DNA of 64,000 nucleotides from Iphione sp. A-MEVVRFRX5 (Eukaryota), in the NCBI GenBank assembly GCA_976226885.1, contig OZ320313.1, positions 39,370,001 to 39,434,000 on the forward strand, in the 5' to 3' direction. A model generated the notes under the pieces. That model ran no database searches and had not been told where the DNA came from. It saw nothing but the letters and a program-made list of their open reading frames with translations. This document shows positions 44,668-60,732 of the stretch, in pieces (the first letter of the stretch is position 1; the number at the start of each line of letters is the position of its first letter). Position numbers and translations under genes: made by a program.

Positions 44668-45734
44668 TGCTCACTCAAAATTGGTGTGTTTCTGGTTTTG
44701 ACCAGCCAAAACCTAGGTAGGGAGGGGGGAATCTTTTTTAAATATTTTTTTATTTTCTTTCTTTGGTTTTCACCGATAATAAAAACAATATGAAGAAGGC
44801 TTTCAATGGATCAGTTCCATAATGACATGCCTTGTACATGGGATACACAGGCTAACATGTCTCCACAAGAGATTTGCTTCTTTCTGCATTTGAGCCAGTA
44901 CAATAATAATAGATATCATATCAGCCAATAGAAGAGCCTGTACATGGGGTAACCATAGAGTTCTGACGGGTCATCTTCCTAAAATAGGCTCAAAAAACAC
45001 TTGTACTCTATACAAATAATTCACATTGCTTCACTCATTTTCAAGATTTATAATCTATTTCATATTGGCCTTGCATATTGCCCAACTCCTTTTCTCTTAC
45101 CTAAATGGTGAATTTCCTTAGACCTGTGTTTTCACAGCTGTGATCGTGTGTATTTTGGGGAAGTTTGGATCATACCAGGACTGTGCAGTGTGTACAGTAC
45201 ATATAGCATGTTTTATATATGTGTCACCCTGTTTTTTTTATTTGAAAGGTTCTCACTTTTCATGGCCATGTATGCATGTTTTGCACAGTCGTGTCAGGAG
45301 AGTGGGAATGTAATGGGCTTGTTAGCTAAGTTTCATGCAAAAAAACGGTATTTCCTTATATTTTCTCACTTTGCTCATACCAGTTCAGCAGTTTTGCCAT
45401 TTTTCTGTTAAATTGACATACTTTTCAATAATTTTTCAATTAGAATTTGATGAGTTTTATGTTTTTTCAGCCAAATTGACATGAATTTTTTTGTTGGCCC
45501 ATCACAATGAAATTCAGTGTTTTCTTCTATTTTTTTTACCAATTTACATAAGTTTTACAGTATTTTGCTGAATTTCTATGGATTTTATTGTTTTTTTTCT
45601 ACAGAATGCCCTGTAGAAATATACATGTGAGGAAATTCAACCTTGGGAATTGTTTGAGGTAAAAAGACTTTTATGTAGGGTGAGGTTTTACTAGGTAGGG
45701 ACGGGTAACCAGAAACACACCTATTTGTTTGGCC
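44668..45734. mobile_element. Long non-autonomous PIF/Harbinger-type element (family A)
   Basis: Ends ...AAAATTGGTGTGTTTCTGGT / ACCAGAAACACACCTATTTGTTTGGCC|TTA. It shares both arms with the ~335-bp copies and has about 730 bp of extra internal sequence. The left terminus is degenerate. Confidence 0.72.
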
Positions 45735-48226
45735 TTATCATTTTCTGACTTATCTCACCATTGTTGCTTTATTATTTTTATTTTGTTGGAGAGTTTTTAT
45801 GCCAGGATTTCCAAGGATATGTATTCGAATCTGTGCCTCTTTGTCAGTAACACATATACATTTTTCCTTAACACAAGTCTTAATCAAATGAAGACAGGGG
45901 CCCAGAAGGCTTGTACATGTACATGGAAACATGTGGCACCATTAGGACAATAAATCTTCGCCACTGGCAGGGTGGCGGTTGTTATTGGTAATGGCTAGGG
46001 TAGATTCCGTTCAGTTTTACCACTTATAGCAGGCCATGATTCTCTTATAGTCTTTGTGTTTCCATTACTCCTGTAAGCTGGGCGGGTCAAGTCCAAAGAG
46101 GTAGATAGATATGCCTCCTGGTGCCCCATACGGATCAGCCCTATTGATAAAGGTAGTTGCAACCACAAGACCCCGATCAGGCACCTCCTTGAGAAAACAT
46201 TCCCCTTATGACATGGTATTATTATATAAATGATCATCCAACGATACAAATTGTATAACACATCTAACCCATATCTAGAGGAGAAACTGCACTTCAAGGT
46301 TCTTCCAAATATCAGCGACTGTATTGAGTTCATCTAGACGGCCATCCGTAGCCCTTGCGCATCCTACCTCTCTGTCTGTGTCTTTCTCGGTCTCTCTGTG
46401 CTTTCTTTTCAGCTCCCCTCTTGAGGCTTCAAAGGGAGAATTGATGGTAGATCACCAACCCTCTTCCAGTCCTCCCCAGCTAACTCCCCTCCCTTCAGCC
46501 ATGACTATCCCTAATGAGAACCAAACAAACCCGAGACCGCAAGCAGCGCCCAGTTGACACACAAAAACACCCCAGACCAAACAACTTGTCCCTCTTGATG
46601 CGTGTGCGGATGAACCAGGCACAACCCATAATAACTTGATGAATTTAGCTCCTGCTGCTGGGACCGAAGGGGGTTGGGGATGGGGCAGGGTGCGATTGCA
46701 TGGGGGGTCATGACAGGAATGATAATAGATACAAAATACTAGGGTGGTGATGGAGACTTGTATCTTACTAGCGAGGAGAAGGAAAACATTGGATTTAGAG
46801 TGGAGGAGAGATCCAGAGAATGGGCGTATTGCAAGAGAAGAAATGGAAAAGAAACAATGGGTGGGGAGAAGAATAGGTGCAGCAGCAAAGCAGGAGAATG
46901 AGGTTAAAAACGACTGAGCAGAAGTAACATGGGACAAGATAGTGCATTGAGCGGCTAGTATTCCATGCATCTGATTAACATGGTCGTTATCCTCCCCCAC
47001 CGGCAGACATTTACGCAGGTGATTGCCAAGTGTCTAATTTAGTCAAATGCATTCTTTTCGAACGACTCTATTTCAATTTTAATGGCCTACGATCTATGCA
47101 TTAGCTCTAGAGAGAGTAGAAGGGCAACAATACTCGGGAAAAATAGAGATACAAGCAAAGATAGACATCTAGAAAACACCCTAAATGGATGGGAAGTCAA
47201 AGTATTGCAACATCAGCCAACTAAACCTTATCGAATATTTCCACATATCAATCAGAAAAAGGCAAAAATATTTAAAGATTTCCTGACATTAAAAACACAA
47301 GTTCAAGATGATAGATATTTTAAGTGCAAATTTAGTTAAGCTGTAGCATGCTAGCTAGACTACCTTTTGTCGGTACAGGTATTTTAATATAAAACATAAT
47401 TTTTCAGCGTTAGATGGTAATCTGTGTGCTGAAGTTAGACCATCACAACGGCTTGTGGTAGGAGTGAAAGATTGAGCAGTTTCCTCAGCCGTGCTGTGGT
47501 GGAGAGCGCTGAGCTGCTCACTGTTCCCAGGCGACACTTCGTCTCTACGGTCCCAGAGGTTTGGGTACAAGCCGACACGCCCCTTCCAGCTGTCGGCTGC
47601 CCTGTTCCCATTGCATCCGTGAACGACCCATACTTTTCCTCACTAACTCCGAAACCGACGCCTGCCCCCCCCCCTCCTAACCACACACACTCCTCTCTCC
47701 CACCGTCATCCATCCCTCAATCCCAAATCCGCCATGGCACAACGATGGGTTGTCACAGTGCAGAGAGGCGGCCCTTCCCGTCATGCAATGCGCCTTGACG
47801 GAGGGCCAAGGGACCAACAGGATGACGAACGCTACCAGACTGGGTCAATCGGACGCTGGTCGGATCGCAATATCACCACATTAGAATTTATCACATTTTT
47901 TACTTTGTCCGTGTCCTCTTGTATGTCCTTCTCCGTGTCTGCTTTTATAAAAAAAATACTTTGTCCGCCTGTTTATATCGACCACGATAATTGTAACTTA
48001 GAATTATACGTATAAACTAGAGAGCATGACTTGCCCTACCCAATCTGTTCTGTGGCCATACAGCACATTTTTTTGCAGTGAAGCTTCATGTTTCTTTCTT
48101 GTTTCTGATGATTCTATGCGGTTTTCGGCGGCATATGCATACAGAATACAGGTATATGTAATTTACGAGGCCATCAGGTTAACGTATTGTGGATACAAAC
48201 AATGGATATAGATTTATTCATAAATA

Positions 48227-52814: not shown

Positions 52815-53146
52815 GGCCCCCAAAAATAGGTGTGTTTCTGGTAATGGCCACCCAAAACCTATAGATAGGGAGGGGGTATCTTTTTTTATTTTCTTTCCAC
52901 TTTCTTCCTCTGGTTTTCAATAATAATAAAGACAATATGAATAATTTTGACCAATTTGCAGTTTTTTGCTGAAGTTCTATGGATTTGGTTGTTTTTCTAT
53001 TGAATTTACCAAAAACATGTGTCGTGAAAACCTGTATCTAAAGAAATTCAGCCTTGGAAACTCCTTTGGGCCAAAAGATTTTTAGGTATGGTGAGGTTTT
53101 ACTAGGTAGGGGTGGGTTACCAGAAACACACCTATTTTTTTTGGCC
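52815..53146. mobile_element. PIF/Harbinger-type MITE (family A)
   Basis: TAA|GGCCCCCAAAAATAGGTGTGTTTCTGGT ... ACCAGAAACACACCTATTTTTTTTGGCC|TAA. Confidence 0.88.
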
Positions 53147-53652
53147 TAAACAATATAAGATCATAGTAAGGCCTAGCACAAAGTTTTGTGTTACTGGTAA
53201 CCCAACCGACCATACATTGGAAAAAATTGTGACTTTTTCTTTTTTTGTGAATATCTTCAAAATGGTATAGATATATACAATACATAATTTTGCTGCTTAA
53301 CCCTTTAAGGTCGGCCAATGCCCAGAGGCACTCCCGTGGTGGAGACGACGAATGCGTGGAAGCACTCCCGTGTGAAAGACGGCCAATGCCCACAGGCAGA
53401 CACGACACCACTTGTGTTCGCGTTGGATTAATTAATAGAAATAATAATTGGATTTTAATTATATTTTACATAAACGTCTAGATATAATTGTTTCGTAGCT
53501 TTATGGTAGAAAAAGTTAATAATACTAATTTAAAATAAATTAATTACAAGTTTAACTACACCGCGAGACGATTCCCGCTAGCGAACGGCCGGACCGCGCA
53601 GTGGTTGCCGACAACAACGGGAAGCAGACGGCTTTTGTCGTTCCTCCCCAGA

Positions 53653-54233
53653 ATGGCAAATTCTGATGATTTTTCAGACTTAGATTCTGAATGGGAGGAT
53701 GAGCTCGGTTTGGAGGCCTATAGATTGCTAAACGAACAAGCAAGGGCATCTTCATCTGATGATTCATCCCAGAGTGAAGATAACAGAGATGAAGATGATG
53801 GAAGCAGTGAGGACGACCCAGAAGTAAAAAAAGACAAGAGGAACGACAATGAATGGGTGACAGTTGAGGCGGATTCCCATGATGTACAACACACTGTGGT
53901 ATTCGATGAAGCTTCAGCAGGACTAAGTCCAGAAATTAATACTGACAAGACGAAGACCCCATACGACTATTTCAGCTTATTTGCCTCCGTGGATTTCCTA
54001 ACAACCATCCTAGCGAGCGTGAATGGAAGGGCGACTGGCTATCGACCCAAAGGCAAGGCCCCAAAATGGGTGCCTTTCTCTATAGAGGAATTGAAGAACT
54101 TCATCAGTCTCTCAATGCTCATGGGTATTATCGATAAGCCCAGGATCCAGCACTACTGGTCAACATTGGAACAATTAGCAACCCCTGTGTTTGCTCGTTT
54201 CATGGCGAGAGACAGGTTCAAGACCATCATGCG
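53653..54233 (+). CDS. piggyBac transposase (PGBD4-like), exon 1
   Basis: ATG at 53653, acidic N-terminus, TPYDYFSLF, EELKNFI...MG...YWST...MARDRFKTIMR motifs. Donor CG|GTATGT at 54233/54234. Confidence 0.88.
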
Positions 54234-54364
54234 GTATGTATAACTGATATGGACTGTAATTTAATCTAAATTTTTATCTATTTTTATATTCATGTAATTT
54301 CAGGTTTTTTTGCTGCCTTTTTAATTCCTGGTTATAACATATCCCAATGTCTCTATGATTCCAG

Positions 54365-55526
54365 GTTCCTCAATACGTGCGGCGACAAGGCGCCCGATGA
54401 CACCAACGCAGATCGACCCCACCCCTCTACGAAGATCCAATGGTTGTTCGACCACTTCAACAATGTAGCTAGGAAGTTGTACCAGCCCAAAAAAGAATTG
54501 ACTGTGGACGAGACGATGGTTGCCCATAAAGGATACCTCAGGTTCAAGCAGTACATGCCGGCCAAGCCTACGAAATGGGGTATGAAATTGTGGGTGCTAT
54601 CTGAGAGTGTTTCTGGGTATGTACTTCGAACAATACCATATTTTGGACGAGAGGATCGTGGGAGGTGCTCACTTGCAGAATATGTCGTAATGGAACTGCT
54701 CAAGAAGTGTCAGCTTCTAGGAAAAGGTCATATAATTTTCATGGACAATTATTATACTGGGGTTAGCCTATTGAAGAAATTGTTGATGTATGGAACATAT
54801 GCTTGTGGCACTGTGCGTACCAATCGGGTCGGTCTCCCCAAACCTCTAACCAAGAGAAAAGTTGTTGGTATGAAGAATATTGGGAGTATGAAATTCAGAA
54901 AAAATGGTCCTCTGTTATTCAGCATATGGAGAGATAAAAGGTTGGTGAGAGTGCTTTCCACCTGGCATGGAAGCAGAACAGCTGAAGTCCCTCGGACAGT
55001 GAAAGATCCTTCCTCTGGTAAATTTATGAAAAAACAGGTGAAGTGCCCTGAAGCAATAGTTGATTATTGTAGCTACATGGGTGGAGTGGATAAATGTGAC
55101 CAGTTGCTTCAATACTACAGATATGCTAGAAAGTGTAGAAAATGGCCAATTAAATTATTTTGGTACGTGATCGAAGTGATGAAGATCAATGCAATGATTC
55201 TTTTCAATTCTGGGAGGACCAAGCCTATGTCTCTATTTGATTTTTCTATGGAGATCATTGTAGCTATGATGTCGTCACCTGTTCAAAACCGTCGGCCGAC
55301 CCAGTCCTCAGAGCTCAGTAGACTCACCTCCCGTTGCTTCCCATACGATTTAGGGCGTAAAAGCTACTGTCGTGTCTGCTACTCACGTGTAAGCAAAGGG
55401 TTACAGCTGACTAGATCCCAAACTAAATATGGCTGTAAAGATTGCGATGTACATCTGTGTTTGCCCAATTGTTTCCGAATCTATCATACTATAAAGCACT
55501 ATGATCGTTTCACCTCTGAAGACTAG
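54365..55526 (+). CDS. piggyBac transposase (PGBD4-like), exon 2 with DDD catalytic core and C-terminal Cys-rich domain
   Basis: Acceptor TTCCAG|G restores the frame (IMRFLN). Catalytic motifs LTVDETM, FMDNYYT and MGGVDKCDQ, plus KPTKWGMKLW. C-terminal CRVC...CKDCDVHLC...CFRIYH. Spliced product is 580 aa with no internal stops. Confidence 0.92.
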
Positions 55527-55697
55527 TTCACTGATGTACAATGCTCGAAACCTATGGATTTGCATGTAATCCACCCTGAAAAATACATATTGACTAAAGA
55601 AATAAATGTAATCTCCATCAATGAATATATGACTTACTTGTTCTCTGTCTGCTGTCATTATATATATCCATACACGTATTATCCGCTTTGAATAAAT

Positions 55698-55997
55698 CCG
55701 TGATGTAATCCCATATAGTTATGTACAGTCTACGACGTAACAAGTAAAAAGTCCATTTGTTGTGTAAATCCATGTGACATTTCATAAAAATCCATATATA
55801 TCATGTAAAAGTCCTCAGAAGTATGTTTCCCTTCATAATTCTCCTTAGGCAATTGAAAAAATACCATTTGATCCACTTCTAAAGATATCCAAAAATCTGT
55901 GATGCAATCCTGTTTAGTTATATACAGCCTATGACGTAACAAGTAAAAAGTCCATTCGATGTATAAATCCATGTGACATTCCATAAAAGATCCATAT
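55698..55997. repeat. ~100-bp direct repeat (199-bp period) in the piggyBac 3' region
   Basis: C(C/T)GTGATG..AATCC...GACGTAACAAGTAAAAAGTCCATT...CCATGTGACATT..CATAAAA at 55698..55798 and 55897..55997. Confidence 0.85.
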
Positions 55998-57171
55998 TTG
56001 TTCTCTAAAAATCCTTATAAAGGCATATCCATACTTGTTTTTTCTTGGACAATTGATTAAATATCCATTTAGAAGGCTTATAACGACTCAAGTCGTCCGC
56101 ACGTATGTGCATCGATGACGCTCTAAAAAAGTGCCGCCCTCTGTAGGGAAACGTCAAAAATACGCCGCCGCGTGAGGCCGTGACGTACCGTCAGGTGCCG
56201 CCTCGATAGGGTTAAAGTATTGGCTTTCATGTGATATAGGTCTCATTGAAATCTAAGCAGTAAGACGTATGTTACCATATACATTTTTAATTGTTAGTAT
56301 GAATTAACACTAGAGAAAAACGAAAAATAAAAAAATTGACACCTACCGACTGACCCTCTATATTTTCAGCATGTTACCAGAAATACAGAACATCTTTTTG
56401 GGGGCCTAAATGTCTAAACAGCTAAATATATGAATTATGTCATAATCATTCAGGTTGGATAATTAGACAGGATTATGGAGATTTGAAATGGGGTAAGAGT
56501 AACTGAAAGAATGCAACTATTACATAGATCTTGGTGGGGTCAGATTAACTTCCTAACCCAGATTTGAGGAGCCTGGTCTGTCTCAGGGATGGATACAGTA
56601 GTCATTCTTGGATTGGAGTGGCTAAAGTGATATAAATAATGCATTTTTGGACGTCCGGGCACACAAATAAATACATGTGCATGTATATACATGCACAAAG
56701 GAGGCGGCCATCTGGTCTTCTACTTATTTAGCTCGCTTGACGACTGAGCCACCTACATGCGCATTTAATCATGTGTTTTTACTACCTGTTCTGCCTAACT
56801 ACCTATACATATTCTTGTACTTTCCTATTTGTTTGGCCATGAAGCAATTTGCCCTCCTTCTCCATATGTCCGCACACCTACCTGTCCGTCTGGCAGCATC
56901 CATGCGTTACCACTACTACTGCCCAAACGCATATCATGTGGCACCTCCTCCAAACCAAATTCTGATTGTCCGCATCAGTGGACCAAACTACCAGGACCAT
57001 GATGAAAGTATTAGAAAGCTAGTTATTAGGCACTAAGATTGATTAGAGAAAGGGTTACCTATAAAAGGAAGGGCATATGTAGGAGAGGAAGGGGATGGAG
57101 GCTAATAAATGGGAGGAAAGGAATGGTTGGAGAAAATGTGACAGGTGGAGGGGAGGGAGATAAATAAATTT

Positions 57172-57748
57172 GGCCTAAAAATATATCTGTGTTTTTGGTA
57201 ACATGCTAAAAAATATAGGGTCGGGAAGCAGGTGTTTTTCACTTTTGTTTTCATTGCTAGTGGAGCCTAAAAACAGCAAATGTGTAAGACAATACCTCTT
57301 TTACTGTTTAGATTTTAATGAAACTTATATCACACGAAAACCAATAATGTGAGGAACAAAATGGTGTATTGTATTAGAGGCTGTTCACATGTAGCCATAT
57401 TTTTCTTGCTGAAAAATCCATCTATGGGTCTGGAGGAGATGTGGAATACCTCCTGCTTAATCTATATTATTGCAATATCAGTTGTCCTTACACCAATACT
57501 TTCTATGGATAATGAATCTGTAGCTGTAGAAAATCCATCCCAAATGGTTTCCTCACTTATGGCCATGGCCCAGTCTATGGGCCCGTAGCTGTAGGAAAAT
57601 ATGGATATATGTGAACACCCCTAAGTCTGTAGTATTATTCACCACCAAGATATTGACAAACAATTACATGTATATATAAAAACCTCTGAGATACCAATAT
57701 GTAGGGGCATTTAGGTTACCAGAAACATTGATACTTTGTTACTAGGCC
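57172..57748. mobile_element. PIF/Harbinger-type MITE (family A-related)
   Basis: TTT|GGCCTAAAAATATATCTGTGTTTTTGGTAAC ... GTTACCAGAAACATTGATACTTTGTTACTAGGCC|TTT. Confidence 0.72.
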
Positions 57749-57806: not shown

Positions 57807-58210
57807 AAGGAGATAGAAGTAGATAAAAAGTCAAAAATGGAAGAAAATGGAGAGGGAAGGGAGGGAAGCAAAATATAGCAAAGTAAAGAGGTAAATGGAG
57901 GAGGAAGAATGGGTATGGAGGAAGTGGTAAGGTACAAATATATTGCGGAAGGGGATTCAAGGATGAAGAGAAGGTGAGGAAGAGATTACGAGGAAGGTGG
58001 GGGGGTAGGAAAAGGAGATAGAAGTAGATAAAAAGTCAAAAAAGGGAAGAAAATGGAGAGGGAAGGAAGGGAAGCAAAACATTGTAAAGTAAAGAGGTAA
58101 ATGGAGGAGGAAGAATGGGTACGGAGGAAGTAGTAAGGTACAAATATATGGCGGAGGGGGATTCAAGGATGAAGAGGTGTTGAAGACGAGATAACGAGGA
58201 AGGTGGGGGG
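57807..58210. repeat. 205-bp purine-rich tandem duplication (2 copies)
   Basis: AAGGAGATAGAAGTAGATAAAAAGTCAAAAA... starts at 57807 and again at 58012, with high identity along the unit. Confidence 0.9.
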
Positions 58211-60250: not shown

Positions 60251-60392
60251 TGGCATCATTTTTAAGCGACACCTACTACAAAGGTGCCGTCCGTGGCATG
60301 TTAGACTCGATAACTTCTCCGAGGCGAGTGGGACGTGAGTGATCGAGCAGAGAGAGGGAAGAAAGAGAGAAAATCTGAGGGCGAAATGATAA

Positions 60393-60732
60393 GGCCAAAG
60401 AAAATGTGTTTCTGGTAACCCACCCCTACCTAGTAAAACCTCACCCTACCTAAACATTTTTTTGGCCCCAAAGAGTTGCTAAGGCTGAATTTCCTTAGAT
60501 ACAGGTTTTCACAGCACATATTTTTGGTAAATTTAGTAGAAAAACAACAAAATCCATGGAAATTCACCAAAAAACTATAAACTCATACAGATTGGTCAAA
60601 ATTCTTCTTATTGTCTTTATTATTATTGAAATTCAGGGGAAGAAAGTGAGAATTTTTTTTTAAAAAAGTACCCCCTCCCTACCTAGGTTTTTGGCTGGTT
60701 GTGACCAGAAACACACCTATTTTTCTTTGGCA
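60393..60732. mobile_element. PIF/Harbinger-type MITE (family A), inverted relative to 52815..53146
   Basis: TAA|GGCCAAAGAAAATGTGTTTCTGGT ... ACCAGAAACACACCTATTTTTCTTTGGCA|TAA. The interior is the reverse complement of the 52815 copy. Confidence 0.88.

What the first reader, a model, noticed from the sequence alone, without database searches (positions are those of the whole stretch)
53653..55526. Intact piggyBac transposase split by a spliceosomal intron: a possible splicing-controlled transposon
Seen: what the ORF track shows as two ORFs joins into one uninterrupted 580-aa transposase by removing a 131-bp AT-rich GTATGT...TTCCAG intron (54234..54364). The intron falls in the conserved R|FL junction just before the catalytic domain, and the DDD triad and Cys-rich tail are intact. 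Retaining the intron stops translation at once (IMRYV*, 196 aa). A second AG at 54303 gives an out-of-frame early stop. Known: canonical piggyBac has a single ORF, although intron-containing piggyBac-like elements exist; the P element restricts activity by tissue-specific splicing, and its truncated product is a repressor. Inference: this apparently recent, potentially active element may be regulated by alternative splicing. It is also a candidate new gene-transfer tool.
Basis: partly seen in the sequence, partly recalled or inferred. Interest (0 to 1): 0.75.

Follow-up and report, generated by a model that had tools for sequence, protein, structure and literature searches.

The report
piggyBac transposon with one ordinary intron
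This is a complete piggyBac-type jumping gene whose transposase gene is split by one convincing 131-base intron; such introns are already known in this transposon family, and nothing here shows that splicing acts as an on/off switch.

Summary
Window 53301-56211 is a complete 2,911-bp piggyBac-like element. It has TTAA duplications, CCC...GGG ends and a paralogous empty site. Its transposase reads as 580 aa only after removal of a 131-nt, AT-rich, phase-2 GTATGT...CCAG intron (54234-54364). That junction scores best of 30 open GT-AG combinations and closes the conserved RDRFxxIMR|FL motif without a gap. The DDD(D) residues and the Cys-rich tail are present.

The regulatory reading (P-element-like splicing control) could not be tested, because no sequencing run was listed for this DNA. 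Anatomy is against a P-type repressor: the 196-aa retention product lacks the C-terminal DNA-binding domain. A dimerisation poison is not excluded.

The intron looks lineage-specific. No relative whose DNA I could read through this site has an intron there: three Mytilus genes, a Logan contig, a carp gene model and five degraded metagenome copies. A Mya arenaria gene model has an intron six codons upstream.

Intron-bearing piggyBacs are already documented: Daphnia Pokey has an RT-PCR-proven 68-bp intron. This scan has also noted many in this same genome, and the same switch idea on another copy was judged ordinary.

Verdict: a new member of a known kind, of low interest. The nearest relatives are about 37-44% identical.

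The parts
53297..53300 (+). Left TTAA target-site duplication
   Evidence: Read directly from the sequence. The paralogous empty site keeps one 4-nt position here.
53301..53316 (+). 5' terminal inverted repeat, CCCTTTAAGGTCGGCC
   Evidence: It matches the reverse complement of the 3' end at 10 of 16 positions, including the family-typical CCC terminus.
53312..53413 (+). Three tandem 34-nt subterminal direct repeats (71% and 62% identical to the first copy)
   Evidence: the repeat finder family D2. Their function was not tested.
53653..54233 (+). Transposase exon 1 (aa 1-193 plus 2 nt). It encodes an acidic, Ser-rich N-terminus and the start of the PF13843 domain.
   Evidence: PF13843 matches profile positions 1-86, E 4.4e-18. 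Relatives align from residue 1. The start context is cccAGAATGG.
54234..54364 (+). 131-nt phase-2 GT-AG intron (GTATGT...TTCCAG), 26.7% GC
   Evidence: No other copy of it lies in the window. No tRNA or Rfam match was found.
54302..54303 (+). Competing upstream AG behind a T-rich tract. Using it gives a frameshifted 204-aa product.
   Evidence: No other AG lies between it and the productive AG at 54363-54364 (sequence).
54365..55526 (+). Transposase exon 2 (aa 194-580 plus the stop). It holds the catalytic core, with D codons at 54507-54509, 54744-54746 and 55089-55091, and the Cys-rich domain.
   Evidence: PF13843 E 1.8e-57 and PF13842 E 2.4e-7. PDB matches to piggyBat 9c0f (4.5e-35) and piggyBac 6x67 (1.1e-24).
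55601..55696 (+). Two AATAAA poly(A)-signal-like hexamers (55601 and 55691) in the 3' UTR
   Evidence: Pattern scan.
55694..56070 (+). Two direct repeats of about 178 nt (55694-55869 and 55893-56070, 78% identical; their 96-nt core is 88% identical) in the 3' subterminal region
   Evidence: The minus-strand ORFs inside them have no credible Pfam match.
56196..56211 (-). 3' terminal inverted repeat (reverse complement CCCTATCGAGGCGGCA)
56212..56215 (+). Right TTAA target-site duplication
57174..57374 (-). Inverted paralogue of the host repeat into which the element inserted. It serves as an empty site.
   Evidence: The two flanks, joined with a single TTAA, align to it without a gap across the insertion point (72% over 215 nt, E 1e-22).

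Best explanation
A complete, autonomous-type piggyBac-like DNA transposon (2,911 bp) sits in an animal genome, probably a mollusc. It inserted at a TTAA inside an older host repeat. Its single gene encodes a 580-aa DDD transposase with a C-terminal Cys-rich domain. The gene is interrupted by one genuine U2-type GT-AG intron of 131 nt in the codon for R194, just before the catalytic core. Making transposase therefore needs host splicing; unspliced or mis-spliced RNA gives only short N-terminal peptides. What is shown: the element's boundaries, the intact reading frame, the catalytic and zinc-binding residues, and the uniqueness of the splice solution. What is inferred: that the intron is actually spliced, and that it behaves as an ordinary, mostly constitutive intron acquired in this element's own lineage and not as a dedicated regulatory switch.
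For: Boundaries: TTAA/CCC...GGG/TTAA ends and an ungapped paralogous empty site. Gene: PF13843 is split cleanly across the two exons, and PF13842 matches the tail. The DDD(D) residues align to T. ni D268/D346/D447/D450. The protein keeps 70 of 77 near-invariant family columns, within the 82-100% range of its relatives. Relatives align from residue 1 to residue 573 of 580. Intron: the extended consensus is G|GTATGT...TTCCAG|G. GC drops from about 45% to 27%. The retained reading hits a stop at once, and two further stops follow inside the intron in that frame. The junction is the best of 30 open GT-AG solutions and rejoins a conserved motif without a gap. The intron has no TIR or TSD of its own and no second copy in the window. 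Precedent: Pokey, a Daphnia piggyBac, has a 68-bp GT-AG intron verified by RT-PCR (PMC3575242). A Mya arenaria piggyBac gene model with TTAACCC...GGGTTAA ends has two introns. Earlier notes of this scan list many intron-bearing piggyBacs in this genome.
Against: There is no RNA evidence at all: no sequencing run was listed, and no spliced or unspliced near-identical protein is in the 5.8-billion-protein collection. Only one copy is visible, so neither selection nor recent activity can be measured. The terminal inverted repeats are poor (10 of 16), and the two ends do not align better than shuffled sequence. A competing AG at 54303, with its own T-rich tract, could divert splicing to a dead product. 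No relative whose DNA could be read through this site shares the intron, so its age and origin are unknown.
Confidence: 0.75

Rival explanations
1. Splicing-controlled transposon. Productive splicing would be restricted, for example to the germline. Intron retention or use of the 54303 acceptor would yield a 196- or 204-aa N-terminal protein that inhibits transposition.
For: Retention stops translation at once, and there is a plausible competing acceptor. The intron lies just before the catalytic core. In T. ni piggyBac the N-terminal region promotes transposase dimerisation without DNA (bioRxiv 10.1101/2022.09.26.509586), so an N-terminal fragment could in principle act as a poison subunit.
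Against: No expression data could be had. An immediate stop on retention is what nearly any AT-rich intron gives. The truncated product lacks PF13842, the domain that binds the transposon ends in piggyBac (PMC5861402), so a P-type DNA-binding repressor is excluded by anatomy. Many other piggyBac families in this genome carry one to six introns, which points to a general habit and not a specific switch. An earlier follow-up of the same idea on another copy found nothing to support it (s1-356249; an unchecked note).
Confidence: 0.1
2. The 131 bp is not an intron but a chance insertion or filler DNA that inactivated the ORF. On this reading the element is a dead copy that only looks intact.
For: There is a single copy, and there is no RNA evidence. 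The closest relatives are intronless at this site. The boundaries share a G|G microhomology, so the exact cut can slide by one base.
Against: GT and AG lie exactly at the only boundaries that restore the conserved motif, with the extended consensus GTATGT and a YAG|G acceptor behind a pyrimidine-rich stretch. The rest of the 580 codons is unbroken. The insert has no TIR or TSD and is not repeated in the window.
Confidence: 0.08
3. A domesticated, immobile piggyBac-derived host gene (PGBD-like) that gained an intron after co-option.
For: Introns are typical of old domesticated PGBD genes such as PGBD5 (PMC5381638). The TIRs here are weak. Only one copy is seen.
Against: The TTAA duplication, the CCC/GGG termini and the subterminal repeats are all present. 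The locus is an insertion inside a repeat, with a paralogous empty site. No orthologue at more than 44% identity was found in any collection searched.
Confidence: 0.04

Closest known systems
Pokey (piggyBac superfamily, Daphnia pulex complex)
   Same: It has a TTAA target and imperfect 16-bp TIRs. Its transposase gene is interrupted by one short canonical GT-AG intron, proven by RT-PCR (PMC3575242).
   Different: The Pokey intron is 68-70 bp and lies near the 3' end of the gene, where it adds a 585-bp second exon. Here the intron is 131 bp and lies before the catalytic core. I made no sequence comparison with Pokey.
Mytilus PGBD4-like piggyBac elements (P0002 M. coruscus, P0006 M. galloprovincialis, P0010 M. 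edulis) and Logan contig P0001
   Same: These are the closest proteins found: 39-44% identity over exon 2 for P0001, P0002 and P0006 (36% for P0010), and 32-41% over the full length. Lengths are similar (586-605 aa), and so are the N- and C-termini and the motifs.
   Different: All are single uninterrupted ORFs in genomic DNA, with no intron at or near this site.
Mya arenaria 'piggyBac transposable element-derived protein 4-like' (P0011, locus L004)
   Same: It is a mollusc piggyBac-like element with TTAACCC...GGGTTAA ends. Its gene model carries introns. Intron 2 is phase 2, AT-rich (22% GC), splits an Arg codon before Phe-Leu, and has the same exon context G|GTTCCT.
   Different: Its intron lies six codons upstream (RDR|F instead of IMR|F), so it is not the same intron position. 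The gene model is a prediction, and the protein is only about 32-35% identical.
Drosophila P element (tissue-specific splicing of the third intron; 66-kDa repressor). This entry rests on my own knowledge and was not checked against a paper here.
   Same: It is a DNA transposon whose transposase needs intron removal and whose retained-intron product is truncated.
   Different: It belongs to a different superfamily. The P repressor keeps the N-terminal THAP DNA-binding domain, whereas here the DNA-binding CRD is C-terminal and is lost. No splicing data exist for this element.
T. ni piggyBac and M. lucifugus piggyBat transposases (PDB 6x67/6x68 and 9c0f)
   Same: They share the catalytic core, the DDD(D) residues and the C-terminal Cys-rich domain.
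   Different: The relationship is distant (phmmer E 1e-24 to 5e-35).

Membership tests
piggyBac superfamily transposon (PBLE) | TTAA target-site duplication flanking the element | tested here: met
   TTAA lies at 53297-53300 and at 56212-56215. The paralogous empty site shows a single 4-nt position.
piggyBac superfamily transposon (PBLE) | Termini 5'-CCC...GGG-3' within terminal inverted repeats | tested here: met
   The ends are CCCTTT... and ...ATAGGG. The TIR is short and imperfect, with 10 of 16 positions matching and no longer inverted similarity above the shuffled control.
piggyBac superfamily transposon (PBLE) | Transposase with the DDE_Tnp_1_7 (PF13843) domain | tested here: met
   E 4.4e-18 for exon 1 and E 1.8e-57 for exon 2, which together cover the profile.
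piggyBac superfamily transposon (PBLE) | Catalytic DDD triad (T. ni D268, D346, D447) | tested here: met
   D242, D321 and D436 (plus D439, which aligns with D450) align to them in the 6x67 alignment.
piggyBac superfamily transposon (PBLE) | C-terminal cysteine-rich (cross-brace zinc finger) domain | tested here: met
   PF13842 scores 31.7 bits against a cut-off of 24. The tail also aligns to the piggyBat CRD.
piggyBac superfamily transposon (PBLE) | Current mobility (several near-identical copies, insertion polymorphism, excision) | not testable with these tools
   There is one copy in the window. No sequencing run was listed, and the genome itself cannot be searched. Only a past insertion is shown.
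U2-type spliceosomal intron | GT...AG boundaries with extended consensus, whose removal restores a conserved uninterrupted protein | tested here: met
   The boundaries read G|GTATGT...TTCCAG|G. This is the best of 30 open solutions, and the conserved motif joins without a gap.
U2-type spliceosomal intron | Spliced junction present in RNA | not testable with these tools
   No run was listed. An exon-2 25-mer had no match in the metagenome contigs.
P-element-like splicing-controlled transposon | Tissue-specific or alternative splicing of the transposase intron | not testable with these tools
   No RNA data.
P-element-like splicing-controlled transposon | Truncated product keeps the element-specific DNA-binding domain and competes at the ends | tested here: not met
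   The 196-aa product ends before the catalytic core and lacks PF13842. In piggyBac the CRD is what binds the ends (PMC5861402).
Domesticated piggyBac-derived gene (PGBD-like) | Loss of transposon ends and TSD; a fixed orthologous locus | tested here: not met
   The ends and the TSD are present, and the locus is an insertion in a repeat. Orthology could not be tested.
Introner / transposon-derived intron | The intron sequence is a multi-copy element with its own ends or TSD | tested here: inconclusive
   There is no second copy in the 64-kb window and no TIR or TSD beyond a shared GGT. A genome-wide count was not possible.

The most novel reading that the evidence does not exclude
The intron, together with its competing acceptor at 54303, works as a gate. 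Only some cell types would make the 580-aa transposase. Elsewhere the element would make a 196- or 204-aa acidic N-terminal fragment that dimerises with full-length transposase and poisons it. That would be a splicing-based self-restraint of a piggyBac, reached independently of the P element.
Probability: 0.08. Interest if true: 0.55.

Novelty: new member of a known kind. Interest (0 to 1): 0.2.

Why it matters
If correct, this adds one more intact-looking piggyBac family, only about 37-44% identical to its nearest known relatives, to the list of candidate gene-transfer vectors. It is also one more case of a DNA transposon that depends on host splicing. The point of wider interest is not this copy but the pattern. 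This genome seems to hold many piggyBac families with one to six introns, while the nearest relatives read in other animals lack this one. That makes the genome a possible place to study how and why transposon genes gain introns. The P-element-style control idea would matter only if RNA data supported it; none is available.

Tried and rejected
1. RNA evidence. The look-up of sequencing runs on the whole element listed no run, so read laying could not be used.

2. Near-identical copies or transcripts. The word search with exon 2 gave nothing above 44% identity. The search with exon 1 gave no hit at all. An exact exon-2 25-mer in the metagenome contigs gave nothing. The search for related loci gave only degraded copies at about 40-44% identity (best segment), without an intron at this site.

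3. Other copies in the window. There are none.

4. ARAGORN and Rfam found nothing in the element.

5. A second, minus-strand accessory gene (KolX-like), a lead from earlier notes. The four minus-strand ORFs in the 3' region lie within or beside a duplicated stretch of about 178 nt and have no credible Pfam match. I did not test spliced models.

6. Longer TIRs or subterminal inverted repeats. Local alignment of the two ends is no better than shuffled sequence.

7. The sigma-70 promoter scan is not relevant to a eukaryote and was ignored.

8. The search of earlier findings by place and by sequence returned nothing.

9. I did not run the large representative search or structure prediction.

Full report
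**What is in the sequence.** The ATG at 53653 opens a frame that runs to 54233. A 131-nt stretch follows (54234-54364, GTATGT...TTCCAG), and the frame resumes at 54365 and runs to the stop at 55524-55526. Joining the two parts gives 1,743 nt, which is 580 aa with no internal stop. The intervening stretch is 26.7% GC, against 45% and 44% in the flanking exons. Reading through it gives ...IMRYV* (196 aa). Using the earlier AG at 54302-54303 shifts the frame and stops after 204 aa.

**Is the junction more than chance?** I listed every GT in 54100-54245 and every AG in 54280-54519, which makes 99 pairs. Thirty of them give an open frame. Scored against an HMM built from 22 relatives, the proposed pair is the best at 535.7 bits; the next is 527.1. 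In a MAFFT alignment with 15 relatives the junction falls inside the conserved motif RDRFxxIMR|(F/Y)L(H/N) with no gap on either side. Pfam agrees: PF13843 matches exon 1 at profile positions 1-86 and exon 2 at positions 98-349, and PF13842 matches the tail. The donor (G|GTATGT) and the acceptor (TTCCAG|G, behind a pyrimidine-rich stretch, with no AG in the preceding 61 nt) fit the U2-type consensus. The 131 nt have no terminal repeats or target duplication of their own and no second copy in the window. They contain no tRNA or Rfam match. I take this to be a real spliceosomal intron, with the caveat that no RNA could be examined.

**The element as a whole.** TTAA CCCTTTAAGG... begins at 53297, and ...CGATAGGG TTAA ends at 56215, so the element is 53301-56211 (2,911 bp).
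- An independent check of these boundaries came from the flanks. Joined with a single TTAA, they align without a gap across the insertion point to an inverted paralogue of the same host repeat at 57374-57174 (72% over 215 nt, E 1e-22). This locus is therefore a true TTAA insertion into an older repeat.
- The terminal inverted repeats are weak. They match at 10 of 16 positions, and the two ends do not align better than shuffled sequence.
- Inside the ends lie three 34-nt tandem repeats on the left (53312-53413) and two repeats of about 178 nt on the right (55694-56070).
- Two AATAAA hexamers follow the stop codon.

**The protein.**
- phmmer against the PDB finds piggyBat (9c0f, 4.5e-35) and T. 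ni piggyBac (6x67, 1.1e-24).
- In the 6x67 alignment, D242, D321, D436 and D439 of the spliced protein lie opposite D268, D346, D447 and D450.
- The protein keeps 70 of 77 columns that are near-invariant in 15 relatives. The relatives themselves score 82-100% by the same leave-one-out count.
- Relatives align from residue 1 to residue 573 of 580, so both termini are as expected.
- By every sequence criterion available this is an intact transposase. Whether it is active cannot be said.

**Relatives and the age of the intron.** The closest proteins in the 5.8-billion-protein collection are only 39-44% identical over exon 2 and 35-41% over the full length. Those with a source name are from Mytilus; the rest are unnamed contigs. 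The exon-1 piece alone found nothing. I read the genomic structure wherever DNA was available.
- M. coruscus (P0002), M. galloprovincialis (P0006) and M. edulis (P0010) are single uninterrupted ORFs.
- A Logan contig encoding P0001 is uninterrupted.
- Five degraded copies in metagenome contigs run straight through the site.
- A carp gene model has one intron, near residue 50 only.
- A Mya arenaria gene model, inside TTAACCC...GGGTTAA ends, has two introns. The second is phase 2 and AT-rich (22% GC), but it lies six codons upstream of ours (RDR|F against IMR|F), in the same G|GTTCCT exon context.

So no available relative shares this exact intron. As far as the data go it is specific to this element's lineage, and its origin is unknown.

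**The regulatory idea.** No public sequencing run was listed for this DNA (none was listed, which does not mean none exists). An exact-word scan of the metagenome contigs was blank. Splicing, tissue specificity and use of the competing AG are therefore all untested.

Two arguments from established knowledge bear on the idea. First, the P-element repressor works because it keeps the N-terminal DNA-binding domain (my own knowledge). In piggyBac the domain that recognises the transposon ends is the C-terminal CRD (PMC5861402), and the 196-aa product lacks it. A P-type competitor for the ends is therefore excluded by anatomy. Second, the N-terminal region of T. ni piggyBac promotes dimerisation in the absence of DNA (bioRxiv 10.1101/2022.09.26.509586). 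A poison-subunit role for an N-terminal fragment therefore cannot be excluded. An immediate stop on retention is what almost any AT-rich intron produces, and it is not evidence of design.

**Comparison with what is known.** The 2017 survey of the superfamily mentions introns only for domesticated piggyBac-derived genes such as PGBD5 (PMC5381638). Intron-bearing mobile piggyBacs are nevertheless documented: Pokey of Daphnia has a 68-bp canonical GT-AG intron shown by RT-PCR (PMC3575242). Earlier notes of this scan, which are unchecked leads, list many piggyBac families with one, two or six introns in this same genome. They also include one case (s1-356249) where the same 'immediate stop means a switch' idea was followed up on another copy and judged an ordinary intron. 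I followed two other leads from those notes: an RNA gene in the intron, and a small convergent second gene. I found neither in this element, although I did not test spliced models of a second gene.

**Verdict.** The element is a new, rather isolated member of the piggyBac superfamily with one convincing lineage-specific intron. This is a new member of a known kind. The splicing-control reading is neither supported nor refuted, and its closest analogy fails on domain anatomy. Interest is low (0.2). It would rise only with RNA data showing regulated splicing, or with a genome-wide census showing how introns spread among the piggyBac families of this genome.

Noticed in passing
L004:3316-3596 (Mya arenaria CP111023.1) compared with window 54234-54364: Two piggyBac-like elements that share only about 32-35% protein identity each have a phase-2, AT-rich intron splitting an Arg codon just before Phe-Leu, in the same exon context G|GTTCCT. 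The two introns lie six codons apart. This could be independent gain at look-alike proto-splice sites, intron sliding, or coincidence.
   Followed up: partly
window 52822-53147, 60392-60724, 45554-45735, 44677-44797: A dispersed host repeat family. The best pair is 82% identical over 342 nt. It has internal inverted arms of the type TTACCAGAAACAC...TTTTGGCC and looks MITE-like. It lies just left of the piggyBac.
   Followed up: no
window 57807-58210: A purine-rich tandem repeat of two 206-nt units (91% match), with extreme GC and AT skew.
   Followed up: no
window 9749-10774 (+): A 341-aa open frame with at least five C2H2 zinc fingers (PF00096, E 2.7e-30). It is probably an exon of a host zinc-finger gene.
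   Followed up: no
window 55205-55207 (residue 518 of the spliced protein): A His that is near-invariant in relatives (the ...GRHFP motif ahead of the Cys-rich domain) is Cys here (SRCFP). If the residue binds zinc, this swap would keep a ligand.
   Followed up: no
window 55694-56070: The 3' untranslated part of the element holds a duplicated unit of about 178 nt (78% identical; its 96-nt core is 88% identical). Each copy has a short minus-strand ORF with no family match. These may be transposase-binding subterminal repeats.
   Followed up: partly
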